Part shown: piece after piece, positions 4,271 through 26,879 of the stretch
Numbering within the stretch: the first letter of the stretch is position 1
Layout: the number at the start of each line of letters is the position of its first letter
Source of the DNA: Haliotis rufescens
Lineage: Eukaryota
Direction of reading: 5' to 3'
Assembly (NCBI RefSeq): GCF_023055435.1
Contig: NW_025964372.1
Coordinates: 41,602,001-41,666,000 of the forward strand
Length of the DNA: 64,000 nt
The notes under the pieces: model-generated
Seen by the model: only the letters and a program-made list of their open reading frames with translations
The model's database searches: none
What the model was told of the DNA's origin: nothing
Position numbers and translations under genes: made by a program

Positions 4271-4311
<41 letters not shown>

Positions 4312-4399
4312 AGGAGGGTGTTGGTTGTTCACAGGGTCACTCGACAATCACAATGTAAACGGGTATTTCAATAATTGTATGATATATTTAGTCCTTGGG

Positions 4400-5335
4400 C
4401 AGCCCCAATCTAAAAACAACAATAAAATCCTAACTCTCACCGACTCTCTTAGTGGACTAAAAGCCCTCCAAAACAAAAATACAAAAAAACGACCTAAATT
4501 AATAAACCAAATAGCAGGCAAACAAATAACCTTCTTGTGGATCCCCGCCACCGTAGGAATTTACGGCAACGAAAGCGCCGATAAAGCAGCTAAATTATCT
4601 CTCAAAATACCAGTAATAAACCTAAACCTACCCATCTCAAAATCAGAAATTAAAAGTGTAAACAAACAAAAAATAACCAAAAAATGGCATAATCCATATC
4701 AAAACTCAAATAGCCAAATCAAAAAAGTGCTCAGAAAACCACTAGCCAAACCTAAAATCCTACACCTCTCTAAAAAAATTGACAGATTTATTACAAAACT
4801 CGAAACAGGACACACGAACCTAAATAACCACCTAAAAAAACTTAAAAGACACACCACAGGAAACTGCCCCCACTGCAAACAACCCGAAACCACAGAACAC
4901 GCACTCATCCACTGCACCCACTACCAAACACACAGAACCACACTACAAACCACCCTCAATCTAAATAAGGTTCCTACTCTAGATGAAACCCTCAAAATAA
5001 ACTAGAAAACTTCAAGGCCCTAGGCGTATTCCTAATCAAAACAGACCTAATTAAGCGCATCTAAAAACTAATTAATCTACCAATCCAAAATCCAATAAAC
5101 ATACAAACACCCACCTCACCCGGCTCCCTTAGTTCCCTCCTCCACCCACCTCGGCATTTATTCCAAATTTAAAAATTCCAAAACTTCAATATAAGCAACC
5201 CCTAAAAGCCCCCTCTTGGGTTGCACACATCACTTTCACCCTATTCGGAATACAATAAATGGTCCGGACAGACCCGTGTGCGAAATACGCTACAGTCGGA
5301 AAGCGCACGTTAAATCTCCTATATCAGTCAGTCAG
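4400..5335 (+). mobile_element. 5'-truncated non-LTR retrotransposon (RNase H-bearing, I/Nimb/Loa group), 3' end
   Basis: ORF 4271-5005 contains an RNase H C-terminus (TDSLS..ITFLWIPATVGIYGNESADKAAK) and a CPHCKQPETTEHALIHC zinc knuckle. An A/C-rich 3' UTR ends in (TCAG)3 at about 5323-5335. Confidence 0.85.
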
Positions 5336-6952: not shown

Positions 6953-7404
6953 GTAATGCATTTTCTGAGCCAATTTTTGAGCTTATGAACATGGGAACAC
7001 ACTGGGACACACATTATTTGGATTCGTCTCCTCGAGAGCTTTCCAGTGATATAAAACATGTTTTTGTAGCTCGCTTCCTTCTGTGTGGTCAAGTTCGGAC
7101 TCCTGGCCATTCCTAAGTTGTCCCGCTCTGCCTTAAACCAAAAACAGAACGTCCCATGCGGTACAAGGAGAGACGTTTATGAAGCCCTGAGGCGTTATAA
7201 CAAGATATAACTGATGCGTAGACAAATACAGGGTACATAATGAATATTCATGCTTGGGTGTAGTTCAGCACATAACCTTTTGTCATCTACAGGTTCAAGT
7301 GAACAACCGATTTTATAAACCTCAGAGTGTTCATTTGTATTGATCGTTAGGTTTCTTCAGACTTGAGAAAGACCCACATGAGGTTTTACTTGCGTAGAAA
7401 ACCC

Positions 7405-7500
7405 GGGACTTACTGTGGAAGACCCGGGGACTTGATTTTCATCGTTATAAAAAGTTACATATTTCAGATCAAGTCCCTGGGTCTTCCACAGTAAGTCCCC
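7405..7500. repeat. About 32-bp inverted repeat (hairpin)
   Basis: GGGACTTACTGTGGAAGACCCGGGGACTTGAT pairs with ATCAAGTCCCTGGGTCTTCCACAGTAAGTCCC (one mismatch). Confidence 0.8.
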
Positions 7501-7962
7501 AGGACTTCCATACCCTATATTCTTTTTAAAAAACCCGCAATACTAGATTTTCTTCACTTTAATTCAAGTTGACATTTACAATGATATTCTTTGCAGGCAC
7601 CCTTCCTGCAGCAGCGCAGAAACGGTGTAGGTCGGCATTTTTAGTTTTCGTTTGTGTGAGAAATAAATCGTCACCTTCCTCTCTCTCCCACATCTTGCCA
7701 GTAAATGAAAAACTCGACTGTAAGCTGTCCACATTATGACGGAGACGCTCACGGGCAATGCGTGCGTGCACGACCAGCACGTGCATGACGCCAGTAGTCG
7801 TCACTCAACACAGCTCACGGATGCGTTTATAGTCTCGTTATATCGCATATAAAATCCTCGTTATTGCGGCCCTTAGGATCTTCCCTCCCAGGCGGGTTTA
7901 CATTTTCAACCAAAACCTCAGAACGGGTTTTATCCTTCACATGTATCACGGCTGTGTGACTC

Positions 7963-9130
7963 ATGGGTATAACTCACAAAATGGCGTCCCATTTGAAACC
8001 ACCCGAGCCTTACCTTACAGGGAGAACGTCAGCCCTTAAAGTGGAGGCGATTGTTAACATTCTGAGGAGTCCAGATGAGAGCAAGACCATCCAGACTGCC
8101 CCCGCCACACCCCAGGGAGGGGAGGTGTACCTCTATAAGATAACCTCGGGAATGAGAGAAGGTGAGGCAGTTGTGTTCAGGCTTAATATCACCACGAGTC
8201 AGGGATTAATACATATGAACAATGTTAATATTTCATGGAAAGCTGATATTATTTATTACACAATTTGAATTCATTGGGGTTGTTAAGCACACATGACCAA
8301 TGTCCTCAAAAGCCACATTCATATACATGTACGTTATTAGTAATATTCTGCTTGACGTCGGAGTCACCCTGCCCTGGTATCAGCTTCCTTGTACAGCCCT
8401 GTGATAACCGGTTTTATGTTCGCTTATATTGTTAACAAGTGATTTTCGTGCACAAAGTGACTACATGAATTAAGAATATTTGTCTGTATCATTATTAAAA
8501 CGACTTCTTTTGCAATATTTTCTATCTATGTTTTTCTTTTTACTCTTTCCATCCCCTTTACAACAATTGTGTACTTAAATAATGAACATTGTTTGATGTC
8601 AACTTGTAGAAAATCCATTGTTGGATTAATCAATATGGGCTAAACAAGAATCAAGTATCGTGTTGCATCTCAGGGAAGGAAAAAAGGACATGGTATTTAT
8701 CATCACAACCTCTAATACAACATATTTATGCATGACCTTACAGCTGATTTGGCATTAAGGTGGGTTGATTTTAGAGTTATGTTACACTATTGACTGTTCA
8801 CAGTTTTATTAATTAATCAACATCACAGGTGACACACTAACACACACAGCTTTTTGAGGTATAGTTCATCTTCAGGATTACAACATTGTTTGCAATGTTA
8901 TGATGTTATTTTCTATTTGCAGATATCTGGAAGGATGACAAATATCACTTCAGAAGTGATGGAACCCGGAAGCAGCCTGGCTCAAGTCCAGTCATAGTGA
9001 AGCAGTACCACAAGGCTTACACCGAGGACAAGACAACAACAAGGGCCTTTGTCAGAGAAGCATCGTATCTGTACAACCAGCCTCTGAAACACGTTCTAGT
9101 GCAATATATCGGGGACCACACACAGGCACA
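7963..9130 (+). CDS. CG-1-like (CAMTA-type) DNA-binding domain, exons 1-2
   Basis: PQGGEVYLY..DIWKDDKYHF..AFVREASYL..VLVQYIGD parallels the CG-1 pattern PxSGSxFLF..KDGHxW..FQRRxYWL..IVxVHY, recognised from memory. Confidence 0.6.
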
Positions 9131-12100
9131 GCCTGCTCCTCAACGAAAGAAGCGTGGTCATCAGACACTTCATTCCCCAGGTGACAGTAAATGTAGGAAA
9201 GTAGAATCAACTGGTGGAGCTGTGCAGTCAGGTGTCACGGAGAACACTAACTCCAACCTGGACCCTGAAGATCATTCATCACCGACAGAATTGGAAGACA
9301 ACGGTAAATCAAACACTATTCTAGGTGTAACACTGAACGAAGCAAAGGTGTCAGAGACTGAAACAAAGAATGATCACGACACAACTCAAAAACGCAGCAG
9401 GACAGGAGATCATAGAGGTGATGATGACAATGATTATTTGGGTACAACGTCAGGCTCTCCTGTCAAGAAACCCCGTTGGCAGCCTCAACTTGAAAATGAC
9501 AACACAATTGTAACCTGTGTCACTAACACACACTATGCTTATCTGTACACATTTCTAGAAGATGTAGAAAGGAATCGGGATGTGATAAGGGTCGTGCGAC
9601 AAGTCCTAGCATTATCTAGGTTCTGGAACAAGGACTGTACCAACAAAGGCAATCCGTGCTTGTCACTCATTGAAGAGGTCGGCAAGAACTGGATCCTAGA
9701 TGCAATTAAAGCAAGGAACTGGGTTAAATGTTCTGTAAATACTGACGTGCTGAGCTTGAACCAAGACCAGTCAGTTTACATAAACCTCATCGCAGCAGTG
9801 CTTGTTGGAGCATGCCATACCAGGACTGAAGTACAGGACTTTGTGAAAACACTGAAGGATCCTCCTTCACACCTGCAGCATGTACAAGAGGACGTCCCCC
9901 TGTCACGTGACTGTACATACACAGTTGGCTGCTACACCATTAGAGGAGATGTTCTGTCTCGCCTGGAAACCAACGAATGGCTGACAGATGAAGTAAGTAG
10001 TCCACCTGCAATATTTACACAATCACACAAACTACATGCCTAGTTAACCATCCAAGAAAATCATTTCATAGAGCATGAGAGGCCTTCGATTTTATCAAAT
10101 GATGTCAGTATTAGATATTAACTGGGGGCGTGAGGGTGGTGAGTGGTTCAGTCACCTAATACTCATTGATAGTGCCTTGAGGTAGGCGAGCTAGAGCTTG
10201 AGTTTGGTTAAACGCCTCTTTTTGACAGTAGTGTCATGGTGAGTTGGATTAAATTATGAAGAAAGTGATGCACATCTTTGACGTTAACCACTTTGTTGAT
10301 TCCCATGGCGAATCTGCATATCGAAATGCGGCGCCTTGGACTCTATGAGCACCCATCTTAAGATAACACGTCCCATTTTAATTCTGGAAACCCAAAAGTC
10401 CAGAAACTCTACGCTCTTTGCCCAGTCTCGGTTAAAGGTATTTACAAAATTAAACATGCCGTTTTCATGGGAACATACCAAGGAAGAAAAAATGAAAAAA
10501 AAATTGTTTAAAAACTCAATATTTAGACTATGTCGCCCATGGGCCTGCCCATGGGCGAAGTCTGGCCCATGGGCGAGAATATGTTCCTTTACTTAAAACT
10601 CATGTTTTTGTTTCGCAAATACATTTAATGTATTCATTCAAGTATCATGACACAAAATTTAATTCATTTTAACTTAATTCAACGATTTTATAGCGATATT
10701 GAAATATTTCGCCCATGGGCGAGAAAACGGTTTGGCCCATGGGCGAGAATATGTTCCTTTACTTAAAACTCATGATTTTGTTTCGCAAATACATTAAATG
10801 TATTTATTGAAGTATCATGACACAAAATTTAACTCATTTTAACTTAATTCAACGATTTTATAGCGATATTGAAATATTTCGCCCATGGGCGAGAAAACGG
10901 TTTGGCCCATGGGCGAGAATATGTTCCTTTACTTAAAACTCATGATTTTGTTTCGCAAATACATTTAATGTATTCATTCAAGTATCATGACACAAAATTA
11001 AACTCATTTTAACTTAATTCAACGATTTTATAGCGATATTGAAATATTTCGCCCATGGGCGAGAAAAAGGTTTGGCCCATGGGCGAGAATATGTTCCTTT
11101 ACTTAAAACTCATGTTTTTGTTTCGCAAATACATTAAATGTATTTATTGAAGTATCATGACACAAAATTTAACTAATTTTTACTTAATTCAACTATTTTA
11201 CGGCGTTATTAAAATATTTCGCCCATGTTTTCGTCAGTCCCTTTCAAGCATCAACTAACTGTTTGCAAAGTATATTGTATCATGTGAAATATACTTTATA
11301 TTATATCATTACATTACTATTTAAAAAGGGCATTTGGTTGGATGTTTCCTTTAGTTCTACAAATTTCACCTGTTTTACATATTGTAGCGATCTTTAATGA
11401 ACCCGGCCTTACCTCTCAAAACGTTTTGACAGTTTATCATACGAATTCATGTGCGTGTACTCCAATTCATTGGAGTTATTTTCCACAACATTAAATTTTA
11501 GTTAGTTTCTATTTCATTTCCCATTTAATGTCCCGTTGATACATCACACTGGGCAATTACGTGACACTAGGTATGCAATATACAGGTACGCGTGCGCGTA
11601 TTTTAATGAAAAAAACTATTCGTCTTTTATTGCATAACGTTTGGCTGAATATCTTACATTCTAACGAAATCTCGAAATAATTATTTAATTACATGCGGTT
11701 TCGAACTGACCAGTGGGAATTATGTTTCAATGCGATTGAGGAAAACGGGAGTGAATATTGTGACACTAAAGCAACTTTTAACTGCATTGTCACTTTTGGT
11801 ATGAAAATGGTAACAGTTCAGAAAAAACAACAGCCTTCTTATGATAATTCTCATTAGTACGTTGCGTTGTATCTAATTACAGTGTCGGCCTTATTTACAG
11901 GTGATTCTACAATACCTGCTCTCGGTCAATTACGATCTACCACACCACGCGTGAATAAACAGTTATGCAGGTGTTGCTGTGGGCAAATACCTAGCCTGAA
12001 AATGTTTATTTTTTTTAGGATACATGTTTTACAAATGTTCGTTGATATGTGGATATATTAAGCACAAAGACAAAAAAATGTTTATGAAAGATGAATTAGT

Positions 12101-15100
12101 GCCTTGATATATTCATCGAGATGTGTATCATCGTTTAATGGGGTCATTCAATAAACGTATGTTTGGAGGAGATATCAAAGGAGCCGCCCAATATACACAG
12201 TGTCGTCCGGTGAACTACCACCCCACCCTGTCCATTAGAGTTATGTAATCGGTACACAAATATATTTGATGCGGTGTCAGTGCGGAAGGAGTTTGAATTA
12301 CGTCCGCCAGTTGCCACAGAAACAATATACAAGGTCAATCCGTACTAATTACCTAGTGACGCACGTAACAACGACTGTCAATAGGGAAAATGGTGAAAAC
12401 AAATTGAAATAGATTTTAATAAAACATTATTGTACTAAATAACTCGCAAAAGCGGTGCCTAAAATTGTTTGACCGTGTTATGTGTGTTGTAAACTGACGA
12501 ATAGCAAATAATTGTCATGCTGTACGCATGGTTCCATATACAAATTCAGTTATACAACCGGTATGAAACTGAGAACTGAGATACCAAGTACAACCTGCAT
12601 TCACACACGGAAGCAATATACTTGTGTGTATGCCCTCTCCTCTAAAAAATGTATCACTAAAGTATTTGCATTGTAATAAATATAGTAATGATAAAACTTG
12701 GTAATTTGGTAGGTCTCCGACAGATATGATTTTCAGTTTTTTTACACCTTTGATTGATACGGATTACGTACCTGTAGTCTAGTCACTGTCTCTAATGTAT
12801 CTGCTTGTTAGAAATTTCGAATGTCTTGTTATAGCACTGTTCCTAAAATACGGCAGTTTCTTTTATCGGGTATAAATAGTTGATTCGTCTTGTCACGCAG
12901 TCATTTTTACTTGATCGAATGATTTCCACAAAAAATTACGACAGAGAGTTTTGTATTTTATTATATTTTTAGAAGATTTTAGAAGATGCTTACATCACTG
13001 TATCTCAGAACGTAAAACTGATAACATTCAAACATGTAATTAGTACACAGTTAATTGTTACATATAATTTCCTGCATATTCCTTTTTGAACAAAAAGCCT
13101 ACATGTATACTGATATCGGTGTCCACTGTTAAAAGGGTATTAGTGCAGTCAGCCATGGTAAATGGAGAGACAATAATAAGGTGATTAATTATAGTCTGTT
13201 GCAGAATATGCGGTATAAGTGTAGTCATTGATACATATACACATTACACATATACAGATGAAATACACGATATGATGCAGTGCAAGAACAAATTAAGATA
13301 CGGTTTCTATTAAATATAATGATACGATTTTGGATTTAATTAGCATGTTTAAATTTTCAGGCCAACACGGCTGAGATACAGCATCGGCATACTCAACTGG
13401 AGTTGTTTTCTGCCGGTCGTAAGTTCATTGTTTGACTGAGCACTCTCGTGTCGGGGTTGCGATATTTTCTTCTCTTTGTTGGCAGCCTGCCACCGGTCTG
13501 AATTTTGAGAAAGGTCTCAGCATGGGACTGTTAATTACTTCTTAATGATGTCTACAAGCTTACAAACTTGTAGATGTTGGGTGCGGTTAGGACCAAACTT
13601 TTTCAGCTCAGAGTGTTAGTGGTCCTGGAACCCATTGTGTCAAACAGGTTCTGCACAAAACGTCCATCAGATTCTACTGTTCAGCAACATTGTCACTGAA
13701 TTTCAGAATTCTGGCATGATATAATAATCAAGGATTTCGAAGGTGAACGAGGGGAAAGGCAGACGCACGTGGATTTACCCTCAGGTTATTATTGTCTGGA
13801 GTTCACATTTTGGGGCATTTCATGTACTAATTGAACAGAGTTCACCTGCACATGTCCACTTTAGTGATACAGACTGTAACCAAAAATGCAATGAGCCGTA
13901 GCTCTTAATCCCTTATAACAACGGTAACAACAACCAGAGTGAGGACACAGTAAGGTTAAACCGTGTCCAACAGACAATCTGAGGTGGCTATCTCCCATCA
14001 AGTCAGCTCTGTTTTTAAGCGCATAGTTATGTTTTTACATATTGAAATAAAAGGAACAAACCTACACATTACCAAATACAAAACTTTATAACCCTCTCTA
14101 GACTTCGTTCCAATTAACCTAGATCATTCAACTCGCTCGCGATGGTCGTATGCGACTTTAAAGTGAATACGTCTACAGTGTACAAGTAACTTTTAACTGT
14201 ATCATATATACTCATGATAAGCAATTATTTTCGTTCCTAATTCGAATGAGCACATTCTGAGGCTAAATCTGCAAAAGGACAGATAAAATATTTCTTTGTA
14301 CAATGCAAACGATACAAACGTAGCGGCTGATAATAGAGACAATGATTTAATAATCTGCAATATATCAAGTGTTCTCGTTCAATCTATTGTACATATTGAA
14401 GTGATTGTAAAGTTTCAAGGAGTACTAAAATGTTGTGGTATTATGAATGTATTTAGAATATGAATAGCGAAAAACAGTAACCATATCGGATGTACATGTA
14501 TAACTTGTCTTCCAACACCACGCTTGTGCCGAGGCCCATGGTCATAAAACTAATCGGTCCCATAAAAGGAGCAAATAGTTTCGCAGATACTTCTTGCTAT
14601 GGTTCACTCACAATTGTCAGACGACCTAATCATCAGTCAGACCAGTCAAGTGTGACCAGCGTACCTGCCTGGTTTTGGCTCCTAATTACTGAACTGCCCA
14701 ATACTGTCATACTGTGGGCAGAGTAAGCGGCCTCGTTGAGTGATACAGACTAACCAGATTATGATTGTGTTTGTAAGTTGCGTTTAATCTGTGTCGGGTT
14801 GCAGTTGTTTTATTAGTCAAGACTAGGGGTAGTTTTTTCAATGAAACCTTTTAGCCGTTGAGTTTGTTTTGCATTCATTTCATTAAATACATTGTTAGGT
14901 AGAATAATAACACGTTATATGGATTAAACATCTCCCTAATCTGAGTATAATCTCACATGTACTCTAAGTACCGTACTATATTACTTTGCGGAGACACTGA
15001 GTATATTTGTTTAGTTGGCATTGTATGCTGTCTGATGACTTTACACAAATCCCTGCATTCAATAGACCCGTGAAGATCTTCAACAAACCATTCTTGGCGT

Positions 15101-18100
15101 AAAAGGGCGACAGTGCTTGTCGTAAGAAGCGACTACCGGGATCGGGTGGTCAGGCTCGCTGACTTGGTTGATGCATGGCATCGTATCCCAATTGCGTGGA
15201 TCGATGCACATGATGTCAATCACTGGATTGTCTGGTCCAGACTCGATTATTTACAGACCGCCGTCATACAGCTGAAATATTGCTAAGTGTGGCGTTATAC
15301 AACTAACAAACAAACAAAACACAAAAAGAGAAAGTGTATGAGTACTAAAACTTGCAATAGATATGCGTACCCTACGTACACACATGAGTCCCATTCGACA
15401 GTCTACAACACACGAATAACTGTCAAACAAGTTTGGGTACCCCTTCTGTTCAGGCAAGTAATTTGGTTCGATAATTTTGTATTAAAATCCTTTTCAATTT
15501 GTTTTCATCCTTTTTCCCTATTCCATGCATGTTTATGTTGCTACATCTTATTGCTCATGTTTCCAAGTATTGTAAAACACTTTAATGTTTCTCCTTCTTA
15601 ATCTAACGTTATAACATTTCCGGTCATTGCCATCATCTAATACACAAGAGATGATACCAAGACATATTTTATTCGGTTTTGTGGTCTATGCGGTCTTACA
15701 ATTGATTTTATAAGTCTTTAAATCTTATGTCTAGTAAATATTTTCACAAACAGGGCTGTTAACTGATATAAGGAATGTGACATCCAGTTGAGGACTGAAT
15801 ACGACGTACGTTAGTCTGGTAACGACATTTCTACAATAATTTTTTGAATAAACCGTTAATACGCCAGTTGTGACAGGGATGATGGTATGGTAGATGTAGC
15901 AGACATATTGACAGCCGTTGTTACGCGAGTCACTAGGTTATTAGTACGCATTGGCCTTGTTGATTGGTACTATACTTTCTGTGGCCACTAACGGACGTAA
16001 TTCAAACTCCTTCCACACTGACATCGCACCAAATATATTTGTGTACCGATTACATAACTCTTACTGACAGGGTAGGGTGGTAGTTCACGCGAAACGGACG
16101 ACACTGTGTATATTGAGCGGCTCCTTAGATATCGCCTCACAACATACTTTAAATGAATGACCAATTAAACGATGATACACATCAGGATCGCGGAGAAAAT
16201 ACAAGCTTCGTTCGCGTTGAATATATATATATCAAGGCACAAATTCATCTTTCATAAACTTTTTGTGTCTTGGTGCTTAATATATCCACATATCAACGAA
16301 AATATGTAATACATGTATCCACAAAAATATACATGTACAGGCTAGGTATTTGCCCACAGCAACACCTGCATAACTGTTTATTCACGCGTGGTGTGGCAGA
16401 TTGTAATTGACCGACAACAAGTATTGTAGAATCACCTGTAAATAAGGCCGACACTGTAATTAGACACAACGTACTAATGAGAATATGAGAATTATCATAA
16501 GAAGGCTGTTACGTTTTTCTTAACTATTACCATTTTCAAACCAAAAGTGACAATGCAGTTAAAAGTTGCTTTAGTGTCACAATATTCACTCCCGTTTTCC
16601 TCAATCGCATTGAAACATAATTCCCACTGGTCAGTTCGAAACCGCATGTAATTAAATAATTATTTCGAGATTTCGTTAGAATGTAAGATATTCAGCCAAA
16701 CGTTATGCAATAAAAGACGAATAGTTTCTTTCCATTAAAATACGCGCACGCGTACCTGTCACGTAATTGCACATTGGGATGTATCAACGGGTCATAAAAT
16801 GGGAAATGAAATAGAAACTAACTAAAATTTAATGTTGTACACGCACATGAATTCGTATGATAAACTGCCAAAACGTTTTGAGAGATAAGGCCGGGTTCAT
16901 TAAAGATGTTGGGTGCGGTTAGGACCAAACTTTTTCAGCTCACAGTGTTAGTGGTCCTGGAACCCATAGTGTCAAACAGGTTCTGCACAATACGTCCATC
17001 AGATTCTACTGTTCACCAACATTGTCACTGAATTTCAGAACTCTGGCATGATAGAATAATCAAGGATTTCGAAGGCAAAACCTTTGCTCGCCCATGGGCG
17101 AAATATTTCAATAAATCTGTAAAATAGCTGAATTGAGTAAAATTGAGTTACATTATGTGCCATGAAAATAGTAAGAACACCTGCATGTATTTGCGAAACA
17201 AAAACATAAGTTTTAAGTAAAGGAAAATATTCTCGCCCATGGGCCAAACCTTTTTCTCGCCCATGGGCGAAATATTTCAATATCGCTATAAAATCGTTGA
17301 ATTAAGTTAAAATGAGTTAAATTTTGTGTCATGGTACTTGAATAAGTACATTAAATGTATTTGCGAAACAAAATCATGAGTTTTAAGTAAAGGAACATAT
17401 ACTCGCCCATGGGCCAAACCTTTTTCTCGCCCATGGGCGAAATATTTCAATATCGCTATAAAATCGTTGAATTAAGTTAAAATGAGTTAAATTTTGTGTC
17501 ATGGTACTTGAATAAGTACAATAAATGTATTTGCAAAACAAAAACATGAGTTTTAAGTAAAAGAACATATTCTCGCCCATGGGCCTACCCATGGGCCTAC
17601 CCATGGGCGAAATATTTCAATATCGCTATAAAATAGTTGAATTAAGTTAAAATGAGTTAAATTTTGTGTCATGATACTTCAATAAATACATTTAATGTAT
17701 TTGCGAAACAAAATCATGAGTTTTAAGTAAAGGAACACATTCTCGCCCATGGGCCAAACCTTTTTCTCGCCCATGGGCGAAATATTTCAATATCGCTACA
17801 AAATCGTTGAATTAAGTTAAAATGAGTTAAATTTTGTGTCATGATACTTGAATGAATACATTAAATGTATTTGCGAAACAAAATCATGAGTTTTAAGTAA
17901 AGGAACATATTCTCGCCCATGGGCCTGCCCATGGGCCTACCCATGGGCCAGACTTCGCCCATGGGCAGGCCCATGGGCAACACTTCGCCCATGGGCAGGC
18001 CCATGGGCGACATAGTCTAAATATTGAGTTTTTAAACAATTTTTTTTTCATTTTTTCTTCCTTGGTATGTTCCCATGAAAACGGCATGTTTAATTTTGTA

Positions 18101-21100
18101 AATACCTTTAACCGAGACTGGGCAAAGAGCGTAGAGTTTCTGGACTTTTGGGTTTCCAGAATTAAAATGGGACGTGTTAGATTAATACAGCAACTTTTGG
18201 CGGTTTCTTCTTTTTGCACCAGTATTTGTTGACTATCAATTAATATATACTAGTGCTAATTATCAACTCATTGCCATGCATCTCGATTCTGCAATGATAA
18301 CACTACTCACCTGCAATGGGCAATGTGCACACAATCTAGTACATCATCAGTTCAAATGTCAGTCATTGCTAACAGCCGAGATATTCTCTTCATGATGGAT
18401 ATGTGATGTGCAGCGGATCCTGCTTTGATTTGAAACTACAAGCGTTCCTTTTGAAGCGAAAGCATTGGGCGATTAAACAGTATAATAAACATTCTAATAA
18501 ATGAACTCTTACCTGTCCAGATCATGGACACATACCTGCACCTCCTGGAGAGAGAGTGGTGTTCCCGTGTCAGCTTCCACTGTCTGGTGCTGCCTACAGA
18601 GACAATCCTACTGTGGGAGGCAGGACAGTACACAGACAGGATAAGGGGGAAAGATGTGAGTGATGTGAGATTTTTATATTTCTTATGATTCTGTCATTCC
18701 GAGTGTATCTTTGCATGTCCACCCTACCAAGAACAAGGTCAAGACTCGAAAGATATTTTGTAGTAGTTGTATATTTTTTGTGATAACATATGATTCGTCT
18801 ATGCCATGATTGCGTATTCAGTATGATAGTAATTGCCACTTGCAATTGTGCACATGATGGATTCATGTACTGCAATGTGTTTCGATTGAGTCAAAGCCAG
18901 TAACCCCATTGATCATAATGCTATTCGTTTTCAATATGCAGTTACAAAAGCAGATATTGCACATGAACATATTCATCTTGCTACATATTATCGTACGAAG
19001 TGAAAATCTGGTTGTCAGAGAGAGTTCTTTAGAAGTTCTCAGTACCAAGTCCATAATACCAATTCACTTATATCTCTGTTACTACACCATATCCATCTTA
19101 TGTGAAGCACGTGTTTTTGGATATATTGATCGTACACTGGAAAGGCATTTGCTGTGAACTTTCAGGAAACTTTGACAAACTACACGTGGATCTTAATGCC
19201 AGTGAACATGCCACGTAATCAACATTGGGTGCTACTGGTGGCTAATGTCAGGGATGGAACAGTGGGCGTGGTTAGTTCTAAACCCTCCTTAGATGTGGAG
19301 GACAAAGTTGTAGAACACTGGAGGTAGGTGGACAGAACAGTGGGCGTGGTCAATTCCTAACCCGCCTTAGATGTGGAAGACCTATTTTTAAACAACACTA
19401 GAGGTAGATACAAAAAAACACACCAAAAAACAGGACGTGTGGCTGCACATTATAAATGTTAAAACCAAGCTTTCCAATTTGAAATGTTGAAATGGTGATT
19501 TGTCAAAAACAAACATGAATGTAAATAAGATCCATCGATAAATTCTTGATACACTCACATTTGTAGCTTTTACTTTTGGGTAGAAGATATAGAACAACTT
19601 GTTCACAGGGTTACTCAGTTCCCCAAATGGGTACACTGTGGGAATTACTTAAACGCCATAAATACAGTTATGTCACTCATTCATTTAAACAATAACATCT
19701 GTATTTGCTAACATTAAACCTAATGATGGACAAAGCAGGAGAAAACATCAGAAATGCCATATAACTTGAAGCAGATATTAAAGGCACTACTGTATTTACC
19801 TTCTGCTTTACCTTTACTTTAACACCAGTCCACATGAGTCTAGGATGTTATCGCCATCGAGTAATAAACATGTATTCCTCAGGCTCTTTGTAAACCACTT
19901 GAAATCTACGTCTAAGGAAGGGAGCAAGTCATGGATGAAGAAACAGTACCCAGTGATAGAACAGTCTGATGGACACAGCTGTGGGATATTCGTTCTGATG
20001 GTAGGTTGGTTTGAAGCTATGTGTTTGATATGAAAGGCACATGTGTCTCAATAACCACGTATGAAAGATACCTTTTCATTTCTAACCTTCATATTCTCAG
20101 GCTGCTGATGCAATTTTGTCGGAGAAGTCCCCAGGCATCATGAGGAACTGTCACGTTGAGAAATACAGGCTGTATGTGCTTCAGAGGATACTACAGTATG
20201 CCAAGGACAAGGGAGATATGCAAGGTGGGGGAAATCACATGACGGCAGTTGATGGACAGGGTAATGTCCCAAACGAAATTCAAACTGTAACGCTGGAGAC
20301 AAGAGATGTACTGGAAAATAGCTGTACAATGACAACAGAACAAGGAGGTCCAACTATTCATGAAGAGGATGGACATGAAACACATGAAGGAACCGACTGT
20401 GCTGTCGCCAGTGATGAAAGTATGCATTCTGGAGATCATTACTATGTTACGTAATTGTAAGGCGTTACGCAAGGTATTATATTTTATATCCACATGTGCA
20501 ATGTCGACACTGCTTTCTTACAAACGTTATTTATTTTCACAGATACAGAGAACTATCCATGTTTGGATCAGCACCTGTTGCATAAGCAGGAGATGGCGTG
20601 CTTGTTAGTGGTTGCTTTGGCGGAGAATAACCTGGAGGAGAGGATGCTATGGGCAGGGTCTGACACAGGGACTCGCGTGGAAAGAGAAAACTACAAAAAA
20701 TATATTGTTTGGGCACTCAAGGTTTTTGACATCAATGAAGAAGAATACACTGAAAATGTGATGAAACCTATTTTATCCCAATTGGCGGGATGCTGTCTCC
20801 ATCATGAAGCAGGCTCATATAGAATAAGAAATCATGAAGTAGCAATAAAGCTAAGAGAAATACTGCTCAGTGATGTGAGACAGTTGGTTGAAAGGATGGA
20901 TATGGAGTTCATATTTCGTTATGTGACATCTAGCGGTGATCCAACCGAAGCGGAACTACTAGATGTGCCTTTTAAAATCGAATTGAAACATGATGATCTG
21001 CATATTATAGCGAAGCGGTGTGTTGCAGCTGTACATGGCAGAAAGTTTGCCTTTGTGTGCATGCATTCCCTATTCCAGGTAGAGACATTTGTTGATATGG

Positions 21101-24100
21101 TTTGGGAGAATCTCTTGCATAATCTGAACAAGGACAGATCTGAACTGTTGAAAGTATTGTCAAAAAATGACATTGTATATGGATATTCCTTTCTGTTTTG
21201 GGCGAGCGTCACAGACAACTCGAATTTACTGAGGAAAGCATTGAACAGTGTTCAGTTTACGGTAAAGAACAGACAGGAAGCTTTGTTTGGAAGTTGCTTT
21301 GGGAGTAGTTTGGCCAACTTCGAGTACTTGTGTTCCAAAAATAACTGGAAGTTGGATACGTTGTGTATGACGCTACCCGAACTCCCAAGACCTCTTATCA
21401 TCAAACTGCAGTTGGCAGTTGTAGATGATCTGAGAGTAAAGTTTGGTAAATGTTCACTTTTGGACATTGCCTGTATGGGTGGGTTGTCTTTGGTGGCTTC
21501 CAGACTGACACATTTGATGAAGACGAGCAAGACCAAGAACAGTTCAAGAAAAAATACATATGTACATTATGCAGCCATGTGTCAACAGGGCAAAGATATC
21601 ATGGATATAGTTATAAAGAAGGGACAACGTAGCATCAATAACATAGGTCCTGAAGGATCAACACCTTTACATTACGCATGTGCAGTTGGAAATGTTAGCA
21701 TTGTAAGCTATCTGTTACAGGAACGAGTGGACATTGGTGAGCAAAACGAGAATGGTAAAACTGGACTTCATTTGGCATGTATATATGGAAACGCAGAAGT
21801 TGTTAAAATGTTGTTACAGAACAAGGGAATAATTCATGTGACAGATAATGATGGCGGCACACCTCTACATCATGCAGCCTGGCAAGGACATAGGGAGGTT
21901 GTGGAGGTGTTATTACAGAACAAGGCCAATGTGGATGAGGGAGATAAGAAAGGCCGCACACCTCTACATGATGCAGCCTCCCAGGGACATAGGGAGGTTG
22001 TGGGGGTGTTATTGCAGAACAAGGCAAGTGTGGATGAGAAACATCAAGATGGCAGCACACCTCTACATCTTGCAGCCTACCAGGGACACAGGAAGGTTGT
22101 GGAGGTGTTATTACAGAAGAAGGCAAATGTGGATGAGAAAGATAAGGAAGGCTGCACACCTCTACATGATGCAGCCTACCAGGGACATAGGGAGGTTGTG
22201 GAGGTGTTATTACAGAAGAAGGCCAATGTGGATGAGAAAGATAAGGAAGGTTGCACACCTCTACATGATGCAGCCTTCCTGGGACATAAGGAGGTTGTGG
22301 AGCTGTTATTACAGAACAAGGCCAATGTGGATGAGAAAGATAAGGAAGGCCGCACACCTCTAAATCGTGCAGCCTGGCAGGGACATAGGGAGGTTGTGGA
22401 GGTGTTATTACAGAACAAGGCAAATGTGGATGAGAAACGTCAAGATGGCAGCACAACTCTACATCTTGCAGCCTCCCAGGGACATCGGATGGTTGTGGAG
22501 GTGTTATTACAGAACAAGGCAAATGTGGATGAGAAAGATAAGGAAGGTTGCACACCTCTACATCTTGCAGCCTACCAGGGACATAGGGAGGTTGTGGAGG
22601 TGTTATTACAGAACAAGGCAAATGTGCATGAGAAAGATAAGGAAGGCCGCACACCTCTACATCTTGCAGCTGACCAGGGACATAGGGAGGTTATGGAGGT
22701 GTTATTACGGAACAAGGCAAATGTGGATGAGAAACGTCAAGATGGCAGCACAACTCTACATCTTGCAGCTGACCAGGGACAACGGGAGGTTGTGGAGGTG
22801 TTATTACAGAACAAGGCAAATGTGCATGAGAAACGTCAAGATGGCAGCACACCTCTACATCTTGCAGCTTACCAGGGACACAGGGAGGTTGTGGAGGTGT
22901 TATTACAGAACAAGGCAAATGTGCATGAGAAACGTCAAGATGGCAGCACACCTCTACATCTTGCAGCCTACCAGGGACATAGGGAGGGTGTGTCGGTGTT
23001 ATTACAGATCAAGGCCAAGTGGATGAGAAAGATGATGAAGGATGCACACCTCTACATCGTGCAGCTGACCAGGGACACAGGGAGGTTGTGGAGGTGTTAT
23101 TTCAGAACAAGGCAAATGTGCATGAGCAACGTCAAGATGGCAGCACTCTACTACATCTTGCAGCCTACCAGGGACATAGGGAGGGTGTGGAGGTATAGAA
23201 CAAGGCAAATGTTGATGAGAAAGATAAGGAAGGCCGCACACCTCTAAATCGTGCAGCCTGGCAGGGACATCGGGTGGTTGTGGGGGTGTTGTTACAGAAC
23301 AAGGCAATTGTGGATGAAAAACGTCAAGATGGCAGCACACCTCTACATCGTGCAGCCGACCAGGGACATAGGGAGGTTGTGGAGGTGTTATTACAGAACA
23401 AGGCAAATGTGGATGAGAAAGATAAGGAAGGCGGCACACCTCTACATCATGCAGCCTGGCAGGGACATAGGGAGGTTGTGGGGGTGTTATTGAAGAACAA
23501 TGCAAATGTGGATGAGAAAGATAAGGAAGGCCGCACACCTCTACATGATGTAGCCAACCAGGGACATAGGGAGGTTCTGGAGGTGATATTACAGAACAAG
23601 GCAAATGTGGATGAGAAACGTCAAGATGGCAGCACACCTCTACATGATGCAGCCTGGTAGGGACATGGGGAGGTTGTGGAGGTGTTATTACAGAACAATG
23701 CAAATGTGGATGAGAAACGTCAAGATGGCAGCACACCTCTACATCGTGAAGCCCACCAGGGACATCGGGTGATTGAGGAGGTGTTATTACAGAACAAGGC
23801 AAATATGGATGAGAAACGTATGATGGCAGCACACCTCTACATGATGCAGCCAACCAGGGACATCGGGTGGTTGTGGAGGTGTTATTTCAGAACATGGCAA
23901 ATGTGAATGAGAAAGATAAGGAAGGCAGCACACCTCTACATGATGCAGCCCACGAGGGAAATAGGGAGGTTGTGGAGGTGTTATTACAGAACAATGCAAA
24001 TGTGGATGAGAAAGATAAGGAAGGCTGCACACCTCTACATGATGCAGCCAACCAGGGACATCGGGTGGTTGTGGAGGTGTTATTTCAGAACATGGCAAAT

Positions 24101-25892
24101 GTGAATGAGAAAGATAAGGAAGGCAGCACACCTCTACATGATGCAGCCCACGAGGGAAATAGGGAGGTTGTGGAGGTGTTATTACAGAACAATGCAAATG
24201 TGAATGAGAAAGATAAGGAAGGCTGCACACCTTTACATCTTGCAGCCTGGCAGGGACATAGGAAGGTTGTGGAGGTACACAGAACAAGGCAAATGTTTAT
24301 GAGAAAGACGATAAAGAAGAAACTGCTTTACAAAAAGCAGAGGCACAACATCACGATGATATTGCAAGGATTATAACTGAGGCAACAAATATACATGACC
24401 TGACAACCAACCATGGTACAATTATAGATAGGTAAGAGCAATTTGGAAATGATGCTTGAGTTGACAGCCCAAACACATATATTGTGTACGCTGTTTTGCA
24501 GAACAGTTTTGAAACCTCACGAAACCATATGAGACCTCGAAGAGGACAGTACCATCAGACATAAATCAAATATCTATTTCAGCTAAAAAATAATATGGAC
24601 AGTGCATTTCTACAAGGCCCCAGAAACAACATACTAAAAGTCCCAAATCAATCAATCAAATATGTCATGAGAGACCAACAGTGTATTGATATTCCATGTC
24701 TGTCCATGTCTTGGAGGTCATCTTGGATTTTTGGGCCAGTCAGTTAGTGTGACAAGTTTTATGCATATAAGTCCCAGCACACTGTTTCAGAGATAAAAGC
24801 TTCCACAGCCTAACCTCATATTTAGGAAATGTGTCGGCCATCTTGATGTTTTGTAGATTTGTCAATAGTCGAAAACGATCAATAGTTGTGAATATCTTTT
24901 TAGAAACGTAATATGGCTATTTTGCAACACAACACATGCTGTTTTTCATCAAATCATTGAACCTCATCTGAAATAAGGAAAATACTATTGACAGTCGGTT
25001 GCCATATTGGATTATGTAAATTAGACATATTTCCCAAACTTGGATTGCTTGGGACTTTAAGTATGTTGTTTAAGGGACCTTGTAGAAATGCATTGTGGTG
25101 AAATGAACTCTATCGCTATTTGTTTCAAGTGAAACCTTATTTTCTATGGGCTACATATGTCAATGGGGACTTTGCAAAAACACTGAAATTATGTTAACCA
25201 ATATTTGAACTTAATTAGGCTTCACTGTGTATAATATTGAATGATTCAGTGGTTTACGTTTATGAGTATGTGGGGCTTTCATTTAGTTTGGAGTCTTTTT
25301 CATTAGATACGAATTCGAAAGCGCTGGAGTCTTTTACATCTTGATTTTGTATTATATGTCACAATAGCATCACTATTTTGATAAAGTCCTATTTTCTCTG
25401 AAATGTTGTGTCAAGTGCATGTGGTATTGTTTCAGGGTGACAACCGATGGCCAGTTTCTTATGAAATCATCGTCAGTTCCACACGGAAGCTATAACAATG
25501 GCGGTTGGCTTACATCCACACCACCAACATCAACGTGCCCCGTGAACCACGCATCAATAGAATTGCCAGGGGTTTATGTTCCGAGTCAACTGGGACAAGC
25601 AGTTTCCACAGACAGACAAAGTGTTATTGAAGAGATCGCTTTGCAGTCATCCCAACCATATCATATAGACGGAAATCTTAACAACCTCCATACAGATCCT
25701 GCACGCATGGAGATACGTTCACCCAATCAAAGATCAGAAGCTATATATGGAAACTCAAGTCATGTTCCCACCTGTGTCCATGCTCCAGTAGTTGGTGACA
25801 CAGTGCCTAGTTCAGATACCACTAGTAATTCTGAGAATGTCATCATTCACTACACTGAGTCTGGGGAAAAGATAGAGCTGCAGCAGCTCTAA
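7963..25892 (+). CDS. Multi-exon chimeric gene: CG-1-like domain + Ulp1/C48-like protease + STAND-like helical region + ankyrin array (3' array disrupted; possibly a pseudogene)
   Basis: Phase-consistent GT-AG exons: 7963(or 7981)-8161, 8923-9992, 18521-18655, 19166-19323, 19883-20000, 20101-20419 (alternative donor 20260), 20543-24431, 25436-25892. Domain motifs run continuously across the junctions (MRE|DIWKDD; WLTDE|IMDTYL; KD|ETL; W|RLF; VLM|AAD; ID|RVT). Confidence 0.7.
9940..20200 (+). CDS. Ulp1/SENP (peptidase C48)-like domain split over five exons
   Basis: LETNEWLTDE|IMDTYLHLL..; WILMPVNMPRNQHWVLLVA (catalytic His); EQSDGHSCGIFVLM (oxyanion Gln, catalytic Cys); YRLYVLQRI helix. Confidence 0.85.
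10564..11228 (+). repeat. 170-bp subterminal tandem repeat, about 4 copies (left TIR)
   Basis: GGCCCATGGGCGAGAATATG at 10564, 10734, 10904 and 11074. Confidence 0.9.
11390..16907. repeat. Second, internal ~1-kb inverted repeat pair (11390-12383 / 15906-16907)
   Basis: ATCTTTAATGAACCCGGCC... is the reverse complement of ...GGCCGGGTTCATTAAAGAT; similarity continues inward to ACTGTCAATA / TATTGACAG. Confidence 0.9.
15064..15320 (+). mobile_element. SINE (family A) nested in the foldback spacer
   Basis: Shares its body with 40997-41215 and has an (AAAC)n tail. Confidence 0.8.
17085..17925 (-). repeat. 170-bp subterminal tandem repeat, about 5 copies (right TIR)
   Basis: Reverse complement of the 10564-11228 unit, with GCCCATGGGC palindromes. 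Confidence 0.9.
20543..24431 (+). CDS. Large exon: STAND-like helical region followed by ankyrin repeats
   Basis: ORF 20494-23247 and continuation ORFs carry GxTPLHxAAxQGHREVVEVLLQNKANVDEK repeats. Lesions: -1 at ~23019, TAG 23196, TAG 23658, -1 at ~23820, -4 at ~24277. C-cap EETALQKAEAQHHDDIARII. Confidence 0.9.
21850..24300 (+). repeat. 99-bp coding tandem repeat (about 25 ankyrin units)
   Basis: ACACCTCTACAT...GCAGCC...GGGACATAGGGAGGTTGTGGAGGTGTTATTACAGAACAAGGCAAATGTGGATGAGAAA recurs every 99 bp. Confidence 0.95.
24599..25097. mobile_element. MITE-like element in the last intron
   Basis: About 48-bp imperfect TIRs: ACAGTGCATTTCTACAAGG..AAGTCCCAA / TTGGGACTT..CCTTGTAGAAATGCATTGT. Confidence 0.65.
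25436..25892 (+). CDS. Terminal exon (S/T/P-rich tail) of the ankyrin gene
   Basis: The ttcAG|G phase-2 acceptor matches donor GATAG|gtaaga at 24431; open to TAA at 25892. Confidence 0.7.
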
Positions 25893-26879
25893 AAGTGGTC
25901 TAGAAAGGAGTTATCATTGTTAGTATGGTGTCCAGTGATACAGTATACATATACAGTTTTACAACCTCCTTTAGGAGTCAGTCGTCCGAATTTGGTTTGC
26001 AGAAAAAAACGAGTTATTTGTCACTTGTGTCGATGTAGCATTGATGTTTCGGTAAGCATATCAATTCCATAAAAGCAAACATTTTACTCTACAAATGCTA
26101 GGACCATAGCTAACTTCATGACGAAAAAATCCTTTATATTGCTTAGAGAATTACATAATAGATTCTTTCAAATGTTCCTAACTGGACATATGCGTATTTC
26201 AGTGTGAACCGAACTTTCCTTAGGCATTGTGTTAAGTTGAATCGAGTGAGTGTGTGAGTTGGATTTAACGCTGCTTTTAACAGTTTTCAAGTTATATCAC
26301 GGCGTGACAGCTTAATGTGGGAGGAAAGCCCGAAGTGATGGAGGTCTCAGACGTTTACCATTTCGGTGATTTGTGTCAATGTAGTTTTAACGTTTCTGTT
26401 CCCATCTCGATTCCATAAAAAACGCATTGTACGTTACAAAATCTAGGAACATGGCTAACTTTCATGTTTAGAAGATTACATAACAGTTTCTTTCAAATGT
26501 TTATAACTGAACATATGCAGATTTCAGTGTGTTCCAAACTTTCTTAAAGCAAAGTATTTTGTTGAAATTAGTGGGAGTGAGTTCAGATTGACGTACACAA
26601 TGAATGTTTGCAGCTACATGTCGCTGTGTAAAATATGTACTTGCAGGAACACGTGGGTGTCTTTCTATCATAGTCGGTATTGTCACTTTGATTTGTTTCT
26701 GCACCATTTCCAGTGTCAGAGTTGTGAAGTCTCACTCCCAAAACGAAGCCATAAAACCTGTTGCAATATAGACTTTAAAGTACGTTCACGGGGACCTCAT
26801 ATTCAGGAACATAATGACTGTTTTTGTAAAACGATTCGTCGTGAAGCATCACTTTAGATTAGACTGTAGCTAAATATGG

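What the first reader, a model, noticed from the sequence alone, without database searches (positions are those of the whole stretch)
7963..25892. Chimeric CG-1 / Ulp1-protease / NTPase-less STAND / ankyrin gene
Seen: eight exons join in phase across 18 kb. Established: Ulp1-like C48 proteases are common cargo of Mutator-like and other DNA transposons. As I recall, CG-1-like domains also occur in invertebrate transposon proteins. From memory, the segment CLLVVALAENNL..LSQLAGCCLHHEAGSYRIRNHEV..MDMEFIFRYV..FKIEL resembles the winged-helix/helical region after the NTPase in mollusc nSTAND3-ankyrin proteins, but no Walker A/B exon is visible. Inference: transposon-derived DNA-binding and SUMO/Ubl-protease modules replaced the NTPase half of an NLR-like receptor, giving a sensor-protease fusion.
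Basis: partly seen in the sequence, partly recalled or inferred. Interest (0 to 1): 0.8.

Follow-up and report, generated by a model that had tools for sequence, protein, structure and literature searches.

The report
Broken abalone transposase-protease/ankyrin fusion gene
This is one decayed copy of an abalone-only gene family that joins a DNA-binding domain and a SUMO-type protease, both from a Mutator-like transposon, to the ATPase-less remnant and ankyrin array of an immune-type STAND receptor.

Summary
The eight exons and all seven in-phase junctions exist. Spliced contigs from four public runs show the junctions 18655|19166, 19323|19883, 20000|20101 and the key 20419|20543. RefSeq models of paralogues use the same joins. 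So the Ulp1 part and the ankyrin part are one mRNA.

The genome is Haliotis rufescens and the gene is LOC124127928.

Domains:
- CG-1: Pfam score borderline, but a strong profile link to true CG-1 proteins.
- Peptidase_C48: above the Pfam cut-off.
- A winged-helix plus cryptic-ankyrin module homologous to the post-NTPase part of nSTAND3-ankyrin proteins (hhalign 99.4%).
- A long ankyrin array. No NTPase is present.

The CG-1 and C48 parts are collinear with CG-1–MULE–C48–PHD transposases, so the N-terminal half is a transposase that lost its DDE core.

The fusion is old and family-wide: 20 or more tandem copies plus deep paralogues, found in three Haliotis species.

This copy is degenerate. Exon 7 carries five lesions, with the first in-frame stop at 23245. 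The third triad residue is Ser, against Asn in all paralogues. Intron 2 holds a 7.9-kb foldback insertion. RefSeq isoform X2, the only model of it recovered here, is truncated.

The sensor-protease function is untested. The scan already found this family on other DNA of this genome (s1-805557, s1-810260).

The parts
7963..8161 (+). Exon 1 (ATG at 7963, second in-frame ATG at 7981); first half of the CG-1-like domain; donor AG|GTGAGG, phase 1
   Evidence: Sequence. Identical to the start of RefSeq LOC124127928 isoform X2, P0189.
8923..9992 (+). Exon 2: second half of CG-1, a low-complexity linker with basic NLS-like runs, a conserved 'mid' helical region, and the start of the C48 domain (...WLTDE)
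   Evidence: The profile of exon-2 peptides hits CG-1 proteins and MULE transposases. dN/dS is about 0.29 among paralogues.
10290..18190 (.). Insertion of about 7.9 kb with a foldback structure (inverted arms of about 2 kb, 10358-12447 / 15454-18185) inside intron 2. Paralogues have an intron of about 0.64 kb here.
   Evidence: spacing of exon 2 to exon 7 in paralogues is about 3.75 kb.
18521..18655 (+). Exon 3, C48 domain
   Evidence: Joint 18655|19166 and a loose end before 18521 that reads the end of exon 2.
19166..19323 (+). Exon 4, C48 domain: catalytic His (NQHW). The third triad position is Ser here (codon 19274-19276, AGT) and Asn in all paralogues.
   Evidence: All RNA contigs have A at 19275 (table 3).
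19883..20000 (+). Exon 5, C48 domain: oxyanion Gln and catalytic Cys (EQSDGHSCG)
   Evidence: joints 19323|19883 and 20000|20101.
20101..20419 (+). Exon 6: C-terminal helices of C48 and an acidic linker; donor A|GTATGC, phase 1
   Evidence: Joint 20419|20543 in contigs of X1, X5 and X8, with matching loose ends in X2. Same join in P0001, P0009, P0185 and P0190.
20452..20454 (+). TAA reached if the 123-nt intron is retained (the Ulp1-only product)
   Evidence: Paralogue model P0186 ends ...SMHSGDHYFVT. Contig depth in this bin is about 3-4% of the flanks.
20543..20890 (+). Start of exon 7: winged-helix domain, homologous to the WHD that follows the nSTAND3 NTPase
   Evidence: AF2 model pLDDT 82.6. 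VIA matches to Cdc6/ORC1 WHDs, Z about 7.
20990..21445 (+). Exon 7: cryptic ankyrin-like repeats not seen by Pfam, still within the nSTAND3-homologous module
   Evidence: VIA match to TRPA1 and other ANK domains, Z 6.2-8.1, model residues about 150-280; hhalign covers this part.
21600..22990 (+). Exon 7: intact part of the canonical 99-nt ankyrin array (about 14 repeats)
   Evidence: Pfam Ank families; unit lengths.
22990..24431 (+). Exon 7: degenerate part of the array. Lesions: -1 nt near 23017, -6 nt giving TAG 23196-23198, first in-frame stop 23245-23247, TAG 23658-23660, -1 nt near 23820, -4 nt at 24276. Donor AG|GTAAGA at 24431.
25436..25892 (+). Exon 8: C-terminal tail of 151 codons with no known domain; TAA at 25890-25892
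   Evidence: Matches the tail of P0001. In P0189 it is joined out of frame to exon 5.

Best explanation
The locus is Haliotis rufescens LOC124127928. It is one member of an abalone-specific, tandemly amplified family of chimeric genes.

Shown:
- One mRNA joins an N-terminal half (CG-1-like DNA-binding domain, linker, 'mid' region, C48 Ulp1/SENP-type protease) to a C-terminal half (winged-helix plus cryptic ankyrin module homologous to the part of nSTAND3-ankyrin receptors that follows the NTPase, a long ankyrin array, and a tail).
- The N-terminal half is collinear with CG-1-MULE-C48-PHD Mutator-like transposases but lacks the DDE/MULE core.
- The C-terminal half lacks any NTPase.

Inferred:
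- A transposase gene lost its catalytic core and was joined by exon shuffling to the WHD-ankyrin exon of a STAND receptor gene. This happened before the Haliotis species compared here diverged. The gene then multiplied by tandem duplication.
- In intact members, the ankyrin array selects a partner, the C48 domain (His-Asn-Cys with Gln) removes a ubiquitin-like modifier, and CG-1 with basic NLS-like runs places the protein on chromatin. There is no ATP-driven oligomerisation. I give this working mechanism about 0.3.

The window's copy is a decaying member. It has five lesions in exon 7, Asn>Ser at the triad position, and a 7.9-kb insertion in intron 2. At most it yields truncated products.
For: - Splicing: (joints, including 20419|20543 in three runs, plus loose ends in a fourth). 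RefSeq fused models P0001, P0002, P0009, P0185, P0190, P0004, P0010-12 and P0015.
- Domains.
- Link to nSTAND3. WHD plus ANK fold.
- No NTPase.
- Transposase link: P0141 is CG-1+MULE+C48+PHD, P0112 is MULE+C48+PHD, P0075 is CG-1+MULE. P0141 vs P0004 N-terminus is 33% identical, E 3e-21. P0187 vs P0112 gives two collinear matches, E 1e-12 and 2e-6. The mid region matches the pre-C48 part of the MULE protein P0114. Related MULE copies lie in the same genome, one 0.4 Mb from the cluster. Ulp1 in animal Mutator elements is published (PMC2836005).
- Family: 20 or more copies with the same order and spacing. Deep paralogues with the same order lie at C594:5.32 Mb and 21.88 Mb and on C27, C24 and C545.
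- Purifying selection on exon 2: dN/dS about 0.29, and about 0.16 for the CG-1 part.
- Decay of this copy. The only RefSeq product recovered for it is P0189, 579 aa, which skips exons 6-7.
Against: - No activity, binding or expression data exist for this copy.
- The canonical Asp of the C48 triad is Asn in the whole family, so the protease may be weak or have a changed function.
- CG-1 scores 19.3 bits for this gene's product, below Pfam's cut-off of 23.5.
- The lesions in the repetitive array were not checked against DNA reads and could in part be assembly errors.
- Contigs cannot show that a single molecule spans exon 1 to exon 8.
- Fold matches are middling (Z 7-8), and Foldseek found nothing significant.
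- The H. asinina model P0182 has C48 but no WHD or ankyrin part.
- The order of events (which half was 'replaced') was not tested.
Confidence: 0.78

Rival explanations
1. Two neighbouring genes (a CG-1/Ulp1 gene ending at TAA 20452 and a separate ankyrin gene). The fused form would be only rare read-through or an annotation artefact.
For: The TAA lies 33 nt past the donor and is conserved in paralogues. One RefSeq model (P0186) ends there, and several short models exist.
Against: Exon 7 opens at a strong acceptor with no start of its own. Spliced contigs in three runs cross 20419|20543 with long flanks, and a fourth run shows matching loose ends. Depth inside the intron is a few percent of the flanks. 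The same order holds in about 20 close and at least five deep paralogues, and fused models exist in three species.
Confidence: 0.05
2. The window copy is intact and functional. On this view the frameshifts and stops in the array are assembly errors in near-identical 99-nt repeats, or are removed by an intra-exonic intron.
For: The array is highly repetitive. The frame-shifting deletions sum to six bases, so the frame is restored at the 3' end. Some contigs match exon 7 of the window exactly over 120-180 nt (table 8).
Against: The lesions are of five different kinds, including a C>T nonsense change and a 4-nt deletion. This copy alone has Ser at the triad site and the 7.9-kb intron insertion. 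dN/dS of its WHD module against paralogues is 0.7-1.1. RefSeq isoform X2 of this gene, the only model recovered here, skips exons 6-7.
Confidence: 0.15
3. The units are copies of a still-mobile transposon rather than host genes.
For: The CG-1 and C48 modules come from MULE transposases. There are many copies, and some are broken.
Against: There is no MULE/DDE domain in any family member scanned. The copies lie head-to-tail in one cluster and its alternate contigs, with conserved introns and spacing. Exon 2 is under purifying selection. The unit carries a host-type receptor half.
Confidence: 0.04
4. The segment 20543-21450 is only the N-terminal cap of an ankyrin domain and has no descent from STAND receptors.
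For: Half of it folds as ankyrin-like repeats. Fold matches of the first half are to generic winged helices at Z about 7, and Foldseek found nothing significant.
Against: The sequence homology runs through the WHD part and is reciprocal. The nSTAND3 helical query finds the family's exons among more than 100 nSTAND3-type loci. hhalign gives 99.4% over 297 columns starting right after the NTPase. Motifs are shared (F122, R158, H174, F216, W219).
Confidence: 0.07

Closest known systems
Mutator-like (MULE) transposases with an N-terminal CG-1 domain and C-terminal Ulp1/C48 and PHD domains (e.g. P0141, P0112; Ulp1+PHD in animal Mutator elements, PMC2836005)
   Same: The CG-1 domain with its PHGN.K...Y.R.CPSV extension and the C48 domain occur in the same order and are detectably homologous. 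The region before C48 is shared with P0114.
   Different: There is no MULE/DDE core and no PHD. The third triad residue is Asn or Ser rather than Asp. The gene is fused to a WHD-ankyrin half, has a fixed exon structure, and lies in a tandem host-gene cluster.
nSTAND3-ankyrin STAND proteins of molluscs (Pfam PF20720; here L036, L037 and over 100 loci)
   Same: The post-NTPase winged-helix/helical module followed directly by an ankyrin array.
   Different: The P-loop NTPase is absent, so there can be no nucleotide switch or NOD-driven oligomerisation. The N-terminus is a transposase-derived protease module.
SENP/Ulp1 SUMO proteases (clan CE, family C48)
   Same: The fold-defining motifs His-Trp, Gln and Cys, and the WL.DE.I start, align with SENP1/2 and Ulp1.
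   Different: The Asp of the triad is replaced. Identity is low (E about 5e-4 to PDB chains). The substrate is unknown.
CAMTA transcription factors (CG-1, TIG, ankyrin, IQ)
   Same: An N-terminal CG-1 domain and ankyrin repeats in one protein.
   Different: No TIG or IQ motifs were found by Pfam. It has a protease and a STAND remnant. The CG-1 here is closest to transposase CG-1 domains. The ankyrin array is far longer.

Membership tests
Peptidase_C48 (Ulp1/SENP) | Pfam PF02902 score above the gathering cut-off (20.7 bits) | tested here: met
   P0189 (this gene's RefSeq product) scores 35.2 bits; paralogues score 36-57 bits.
Peptidase_C48 (Ulp1/SENP) | Catalytic His, Cys and oxyanion Gln | tested here: met
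   NQHW in exon 4 and EQSDGHSCG in exon 5 align with SENP1/2 H, Q and C.
Peptidase_C48 (Ulp1/SENP) | Catalytic Asp 17 residues after His | tested here: not met
   Ser in the window copy (VVSS) and Asn in all 11 paralogues and deep paralogues (VVNS/IINS). Related transposases keep Asp.
Peptidase_C48 (Ulp1/SENP) | Ubl isopeptidase or processing activity | not testable with these tools
   Needs an enzyme assay.
CG-1 domain (PF03859) | Pfam score above the gathering cut-off (23.5 bits) over the whole domain | tested here: inconclusive
   This gene's product scores 19.3 bits (profile positions 7-114 of 116). Paralogues score 19.7, 23.0, 23.6, 25.0 and 30.9. The exon-2 profile hits proteins with Pfam CG-1 at 1e-40.
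STAND NTPase (nSTAND3, PF20720) | P-loop NTPase domain with Walker A and B | tested here: not met
   No G....GK[ST] motif in any frame of 7000-26500. tblastn with two nSTAND3 NTPase domains gives nothing below E 1.6. No PF20720 hit in family proteins.
STAND NTPase (nSTAND3, PF20720) | Winged-helix/helical module after the NTPase, followed by a repeat sensor | tested here: met
   BLASTP E 1e-10 to residues 257-608 of an nSTAND3-ANK ORF; hhalign 99.4%; WHD fold.
MULE transposase | MULE/DDE RNase H-like catalytic domain (PF10551) | tested here: not met
   Absent from P0001-P0004, P0187, P0189 and the exon-2 ORFs of nine paralogues. Present in relatives P0141, P0112, P0075 and P0114.
Ankyrin repeat proteins | Tandem 33-residue ANK repeats | tested here: met
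   Pfam Ank families at E 1e-129 to 1e-142; 99-nt units.

The most novel reading that the evidence does not exclude
Intact members of this family are a new kind of NTPase-independent innate-immune or genome-defence receptor. A hypervariable ankyrin array with a STAND winged-helix remnant recognises a pathogen or transposon product. This directly licenses a domesticated transposase module (CG-1 DNA binding plus C48 Ubl protease) to act on chromatin or on SUMO/ubiquitin-like conjugates.
Probability: 0.12. Interest if true: 0.8.

Novelty: new variant of a known kind. Interest (0 to 1): 0.5.

Why it matters
The family shows two things at once. A Mutator-like transposase was domesticated with only its accessory domains kept (a CG-1 DNA binder and a Ulp1 protease). 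A STAND receptor was reused without its ATPase. The result then expanded into a large tandem family in abalones. If intact members work as ankyrin-guided Ubl proteases, they would be a receptor-effector design not described in animals. The link between CG-1 and MULE transposases also bears on where the CG-1 domain of CAMTA factors came from. The copy in this window adds little: it is a decaying member.

Tried and rejected
- Pfam on single exons gave no CG-1 or C48 hit. The domains showed only in database proteins.
The spliced model was searched exon by exon, and full-length evidence came from RefSeq proteins returned by the searches.
- Word-based protein searches reached only Haliotis.
- The first AF2 model, from ten sequences, was unusable (pLDDT 52). 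A 22-sequence alignment gave pLDDT 82.6.
- Foldseek against PDB gave nothing significant.
- The protein-atlas look-up of the mid region gave only scores under 0.9.
- The alignment of close paralogues across the 123-nt intron was too similar (97%) to separate fusion from neighbouring genes. The only indels (5, 1 and 1 nt) do fall inside the intron.
- Paper searches found no description of the family.
Thirteen short stretches were fetched instead.
The N run near 57250-57680 was left alone.
Full report
**Observation**

The window is eukaryotic.

Exon borders were read from the sequence:
- e1 7963-8161
- e2 8923-9992
- e3 18521-18655
- e4 19166-19323
- e5 19883-20000
- e6 20101-20419
- e7 20543-24431
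- e8 25436-25892

All borders are GT..AG and all seven joins are in phase.

I laid Logan contigs of four runs from four studies on 18400-21750. The contigs are spliced. They show joints 18655|19166, 19323|19883, 20000|20101 and 20419|20543. The last joint appears in X1 (one contig with 289+947 nt), X5 and X8, and X2 has matching loose ends on both sides. A loose end before 18521 reads ...TGGCTGACAGATGAA, which is the end of exon 2. Depth inside the 123-nt intron is a few percent of the flanks, though contig depth is a poor measure. So the Ulp1 part and the ankyrin part lie on one mRNA.

RefSeq protein P0189 (LOC124127928 isoform X2) is this window's gene, letter for letter through exons 1-5.

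Exon 7 is not open in this copy. Read in frame from 20545 it meets 21 stops, the first at 23245. The 99-nt repeat units show five lesions:
- -1 nt near 23017
- -6 nt creating TAG 23196-23198
- CAG>TAG at 23658-23660
- -1 nt near 23820
- -4 nt at 24276

The third triad codon (19274-19276) is Ser here and Asn in all eleven close paralogues. Every RNA contig has A, not G, at 19275, so the transcripts seen come from paralogues or other alleles.

Intron 2 carries a foldback insertion of about 7.9 kb that paralogues lack.

P0189 joins exon 5 to exon 8 out of frame and ends ...GDNRWPVSYEIIVSSTRKL.

This copy therefore looks like a decaying member.

**Domains**

Single exons gave only ankyrin hits. 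Full-length proteins came from the databases. P0001 (H. cracherodii, 2079 aa) has the same eight-exon product, including ...ASDE-N-TQDYPCL across the key join.

- **C48.** Pfam gives Peptidase_C48 at 35-57 bits against a cut-off of 20.7.
- **CG-1.** Pfam gives 19.3 bits for this gene, 19.7, 23.0 and 23.6 for close paralogues, and 25.0 and 30.9 for deep paralogues, against a cut-off of 23.5. The match always covers profile positions 5-114 of 116.
- **Catalytic residues.** Alignment with SENP1/2 and Ulp1 places His, Gln and Cys correctly and puts Asn or Ser at the Asp position.
- **Exon-2 profile.** A profile of exon-2 peptides from eleven paralogues was searched against 1.84 billion representatives and found 668 proteins. 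Full-length matches are all from Haliotis (H. rufescens, H. cracherodii, H. rubra). The rest mostly match the CG-1 part. One example is a Capitella protein with Pfam CG-1 at 1e-40.

**Transposon origin**

Among the profile hits are these proteins:
- P0141: CG-1 + MULE + Peptidase_C48 + PHD
- P0112: MULE + C48 + PHD, with a CG-1-like N-terminus by our profile
- P0075: CG-1 + MULE
- P0114: ZSWIM/MULE followed by a match to the mid region and the start of C48

Pairwise comparisons support the link:
- P0141 and the family member P0004 share 33% identity over the first ~190 residues, E 3e-21.
- P0187 and P0112 give two collinear matches, CG-1 at E 1e-12 and C48 at E 2e-6.
- The mid region matches the pre-C48 part of P0114 at E 1e-6.

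No family member has a MULE domain. The abalone genome holds MULE copies of this type. One has an open 732-aa frame at C594:42334233-42336161, 0.4 Mb from the cluster. Ulp1 and PHD in animal Mutator elements are published (PMC2836005).

So the N-terminal half is a transposase that kept its accessory domains and lost the DDE core.

**STAND remnant**

- The first 372 residues of exon 7 hit three ORFs elsewhere in the genome.
- Two of these carry Pfam nSTAND3 (73 and 98 bits) before the matched part and ankyrins after it.
- BLASTP aligns window residues 10-356 with residues 257-608 of one of them, E 1e-10.
- Profile-profile comparison gives 99.4%, E 2.5e-21, over 297 columns starting right after the NTPase.
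- The reverse search with the nSTAND3 helical part finds more than 100 loci, among them the exon-7 homologues of deep family members.
- A 22-sequence alignment shows shared motifs and gave an AF2 model with pLDDT 82.6.
- In the model, residues 1-110 form a winged helix. The best matches are Cdc6/ORC1 WHDs at Z about 7.
- Residues 150-280 form ankyrin-like repeats, with TRPA1 at Z 8.1. These Z values are middling, and Foldseek found nothing significant.
- No NTPase sequence and no Walker A motif exist in 7000-26500.

**Family**

- Exon 2 and the WHD exon recur in the same order and on the same strand, about 3.75 kb apart, in some 20 copies on C594 41.6-41.93 Mb and on contigs C6 and C72.
- Deep paralogues (20-35% identity) with the same order lie at C594:5.32 Mb and 21.88 Mb and on C27, C24 and C545.
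- H. rubra P0015 has C48, the WHD module (hhalign E 1.7e-51) and ankyrins.
- One deep paralogue line (P0003) goes from C48 straight to ankyrins.
- The H. asinina model P0182 has only C48.
- Exon 2 is under purifying selection: dN/dS is about 0.29 overall and about 0.16 for CG-1.
- The WHD module evolves faster, at about 0.63, and at 0.7-1.1 against the window copy.

**Mechanism**

The architecture, the splicing and the two origins are shown. The function is inferred. In intact members, the ankyrin array may bind a partner, the C48 domain may remove a ubiquitin-like modifier, and CG-1 with basic runs may place the protein on chromatin, with no nucleotide switch. I rate this at about 0.3. The conserved Asn in place of Asp may mean altered or weak catalysis.

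**Earlier notes of this scan**

Two earlier follow-ups on other pieces of this genome (s1-805557, s1-810260) describe the same family and reach the same reading. I tested those claims independently here.

Noticed in passing
window 10290-18190: Foldback-type insertion of about 7.9 kb in intron 2. It has inverted arms of about 2 kb (95-98% complementary), internal tandem units, and a GC-rich CCCATGGGC motif near the ends. It is absent from paralogous introns.
   Followed up: partly
window 4271-5005: A 244-aa ORF resembling the RNase H end of a non-LTR retrotransposon polyprotein (...FLWIPATVGIYGNESADKAAK...), upstream of the gene. This rests on reading the sequence only.
   Followed up: no
window about 57250-57680: A run of N (assembly gap or masked stretch).
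   Followed up: no
G000:C594:42334233-42337086: A Mutator-like element of the CG-1-MULE-C48 type with an open 732-aa frame (38% identical to P0141). It lies 0.4 Mb from the family cluster and could represent the ancestral type of the N-terminal half.
   Followed up: partly
proteins P0141, P0075, P0040 (metagenome/Logan assemblies): CG-1 domains sit at the N-terminus of MULE transposases, and next to FLYWCH in one protein. This suggests CG-1 is a transposase DNA-binding domain as well as the CAMTA domain.
   Followed up: partly
L001-L024 (paralogues): Against the window copy, synonymous divergence is 0.06-0.15 in exon 2 paralogue loci (L002-L012) but only 0.04-0.07 in WHD-module paralogue loci (L014-L024). 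The two locus sets were not matched copy by copy. This may point to gene conversion in the 3' half of the units.
   Followed up: no
RefSeq models P0184, P0188, P0189: Several paralogues have annotated isoforms that join exon 2 or exon 5 directly to the last exon out of frame. All end ...GDNRWPVSYEIIVSSTRKL.
   Followed up: no
whole genome G000: At least 104 loci carry the nSTAND3-type post-NTPase module, mostly in ORFs of 1000-3000 aa. Abalone therefore has a very large STAND-ankyrin repertoire.
   Followed up: no
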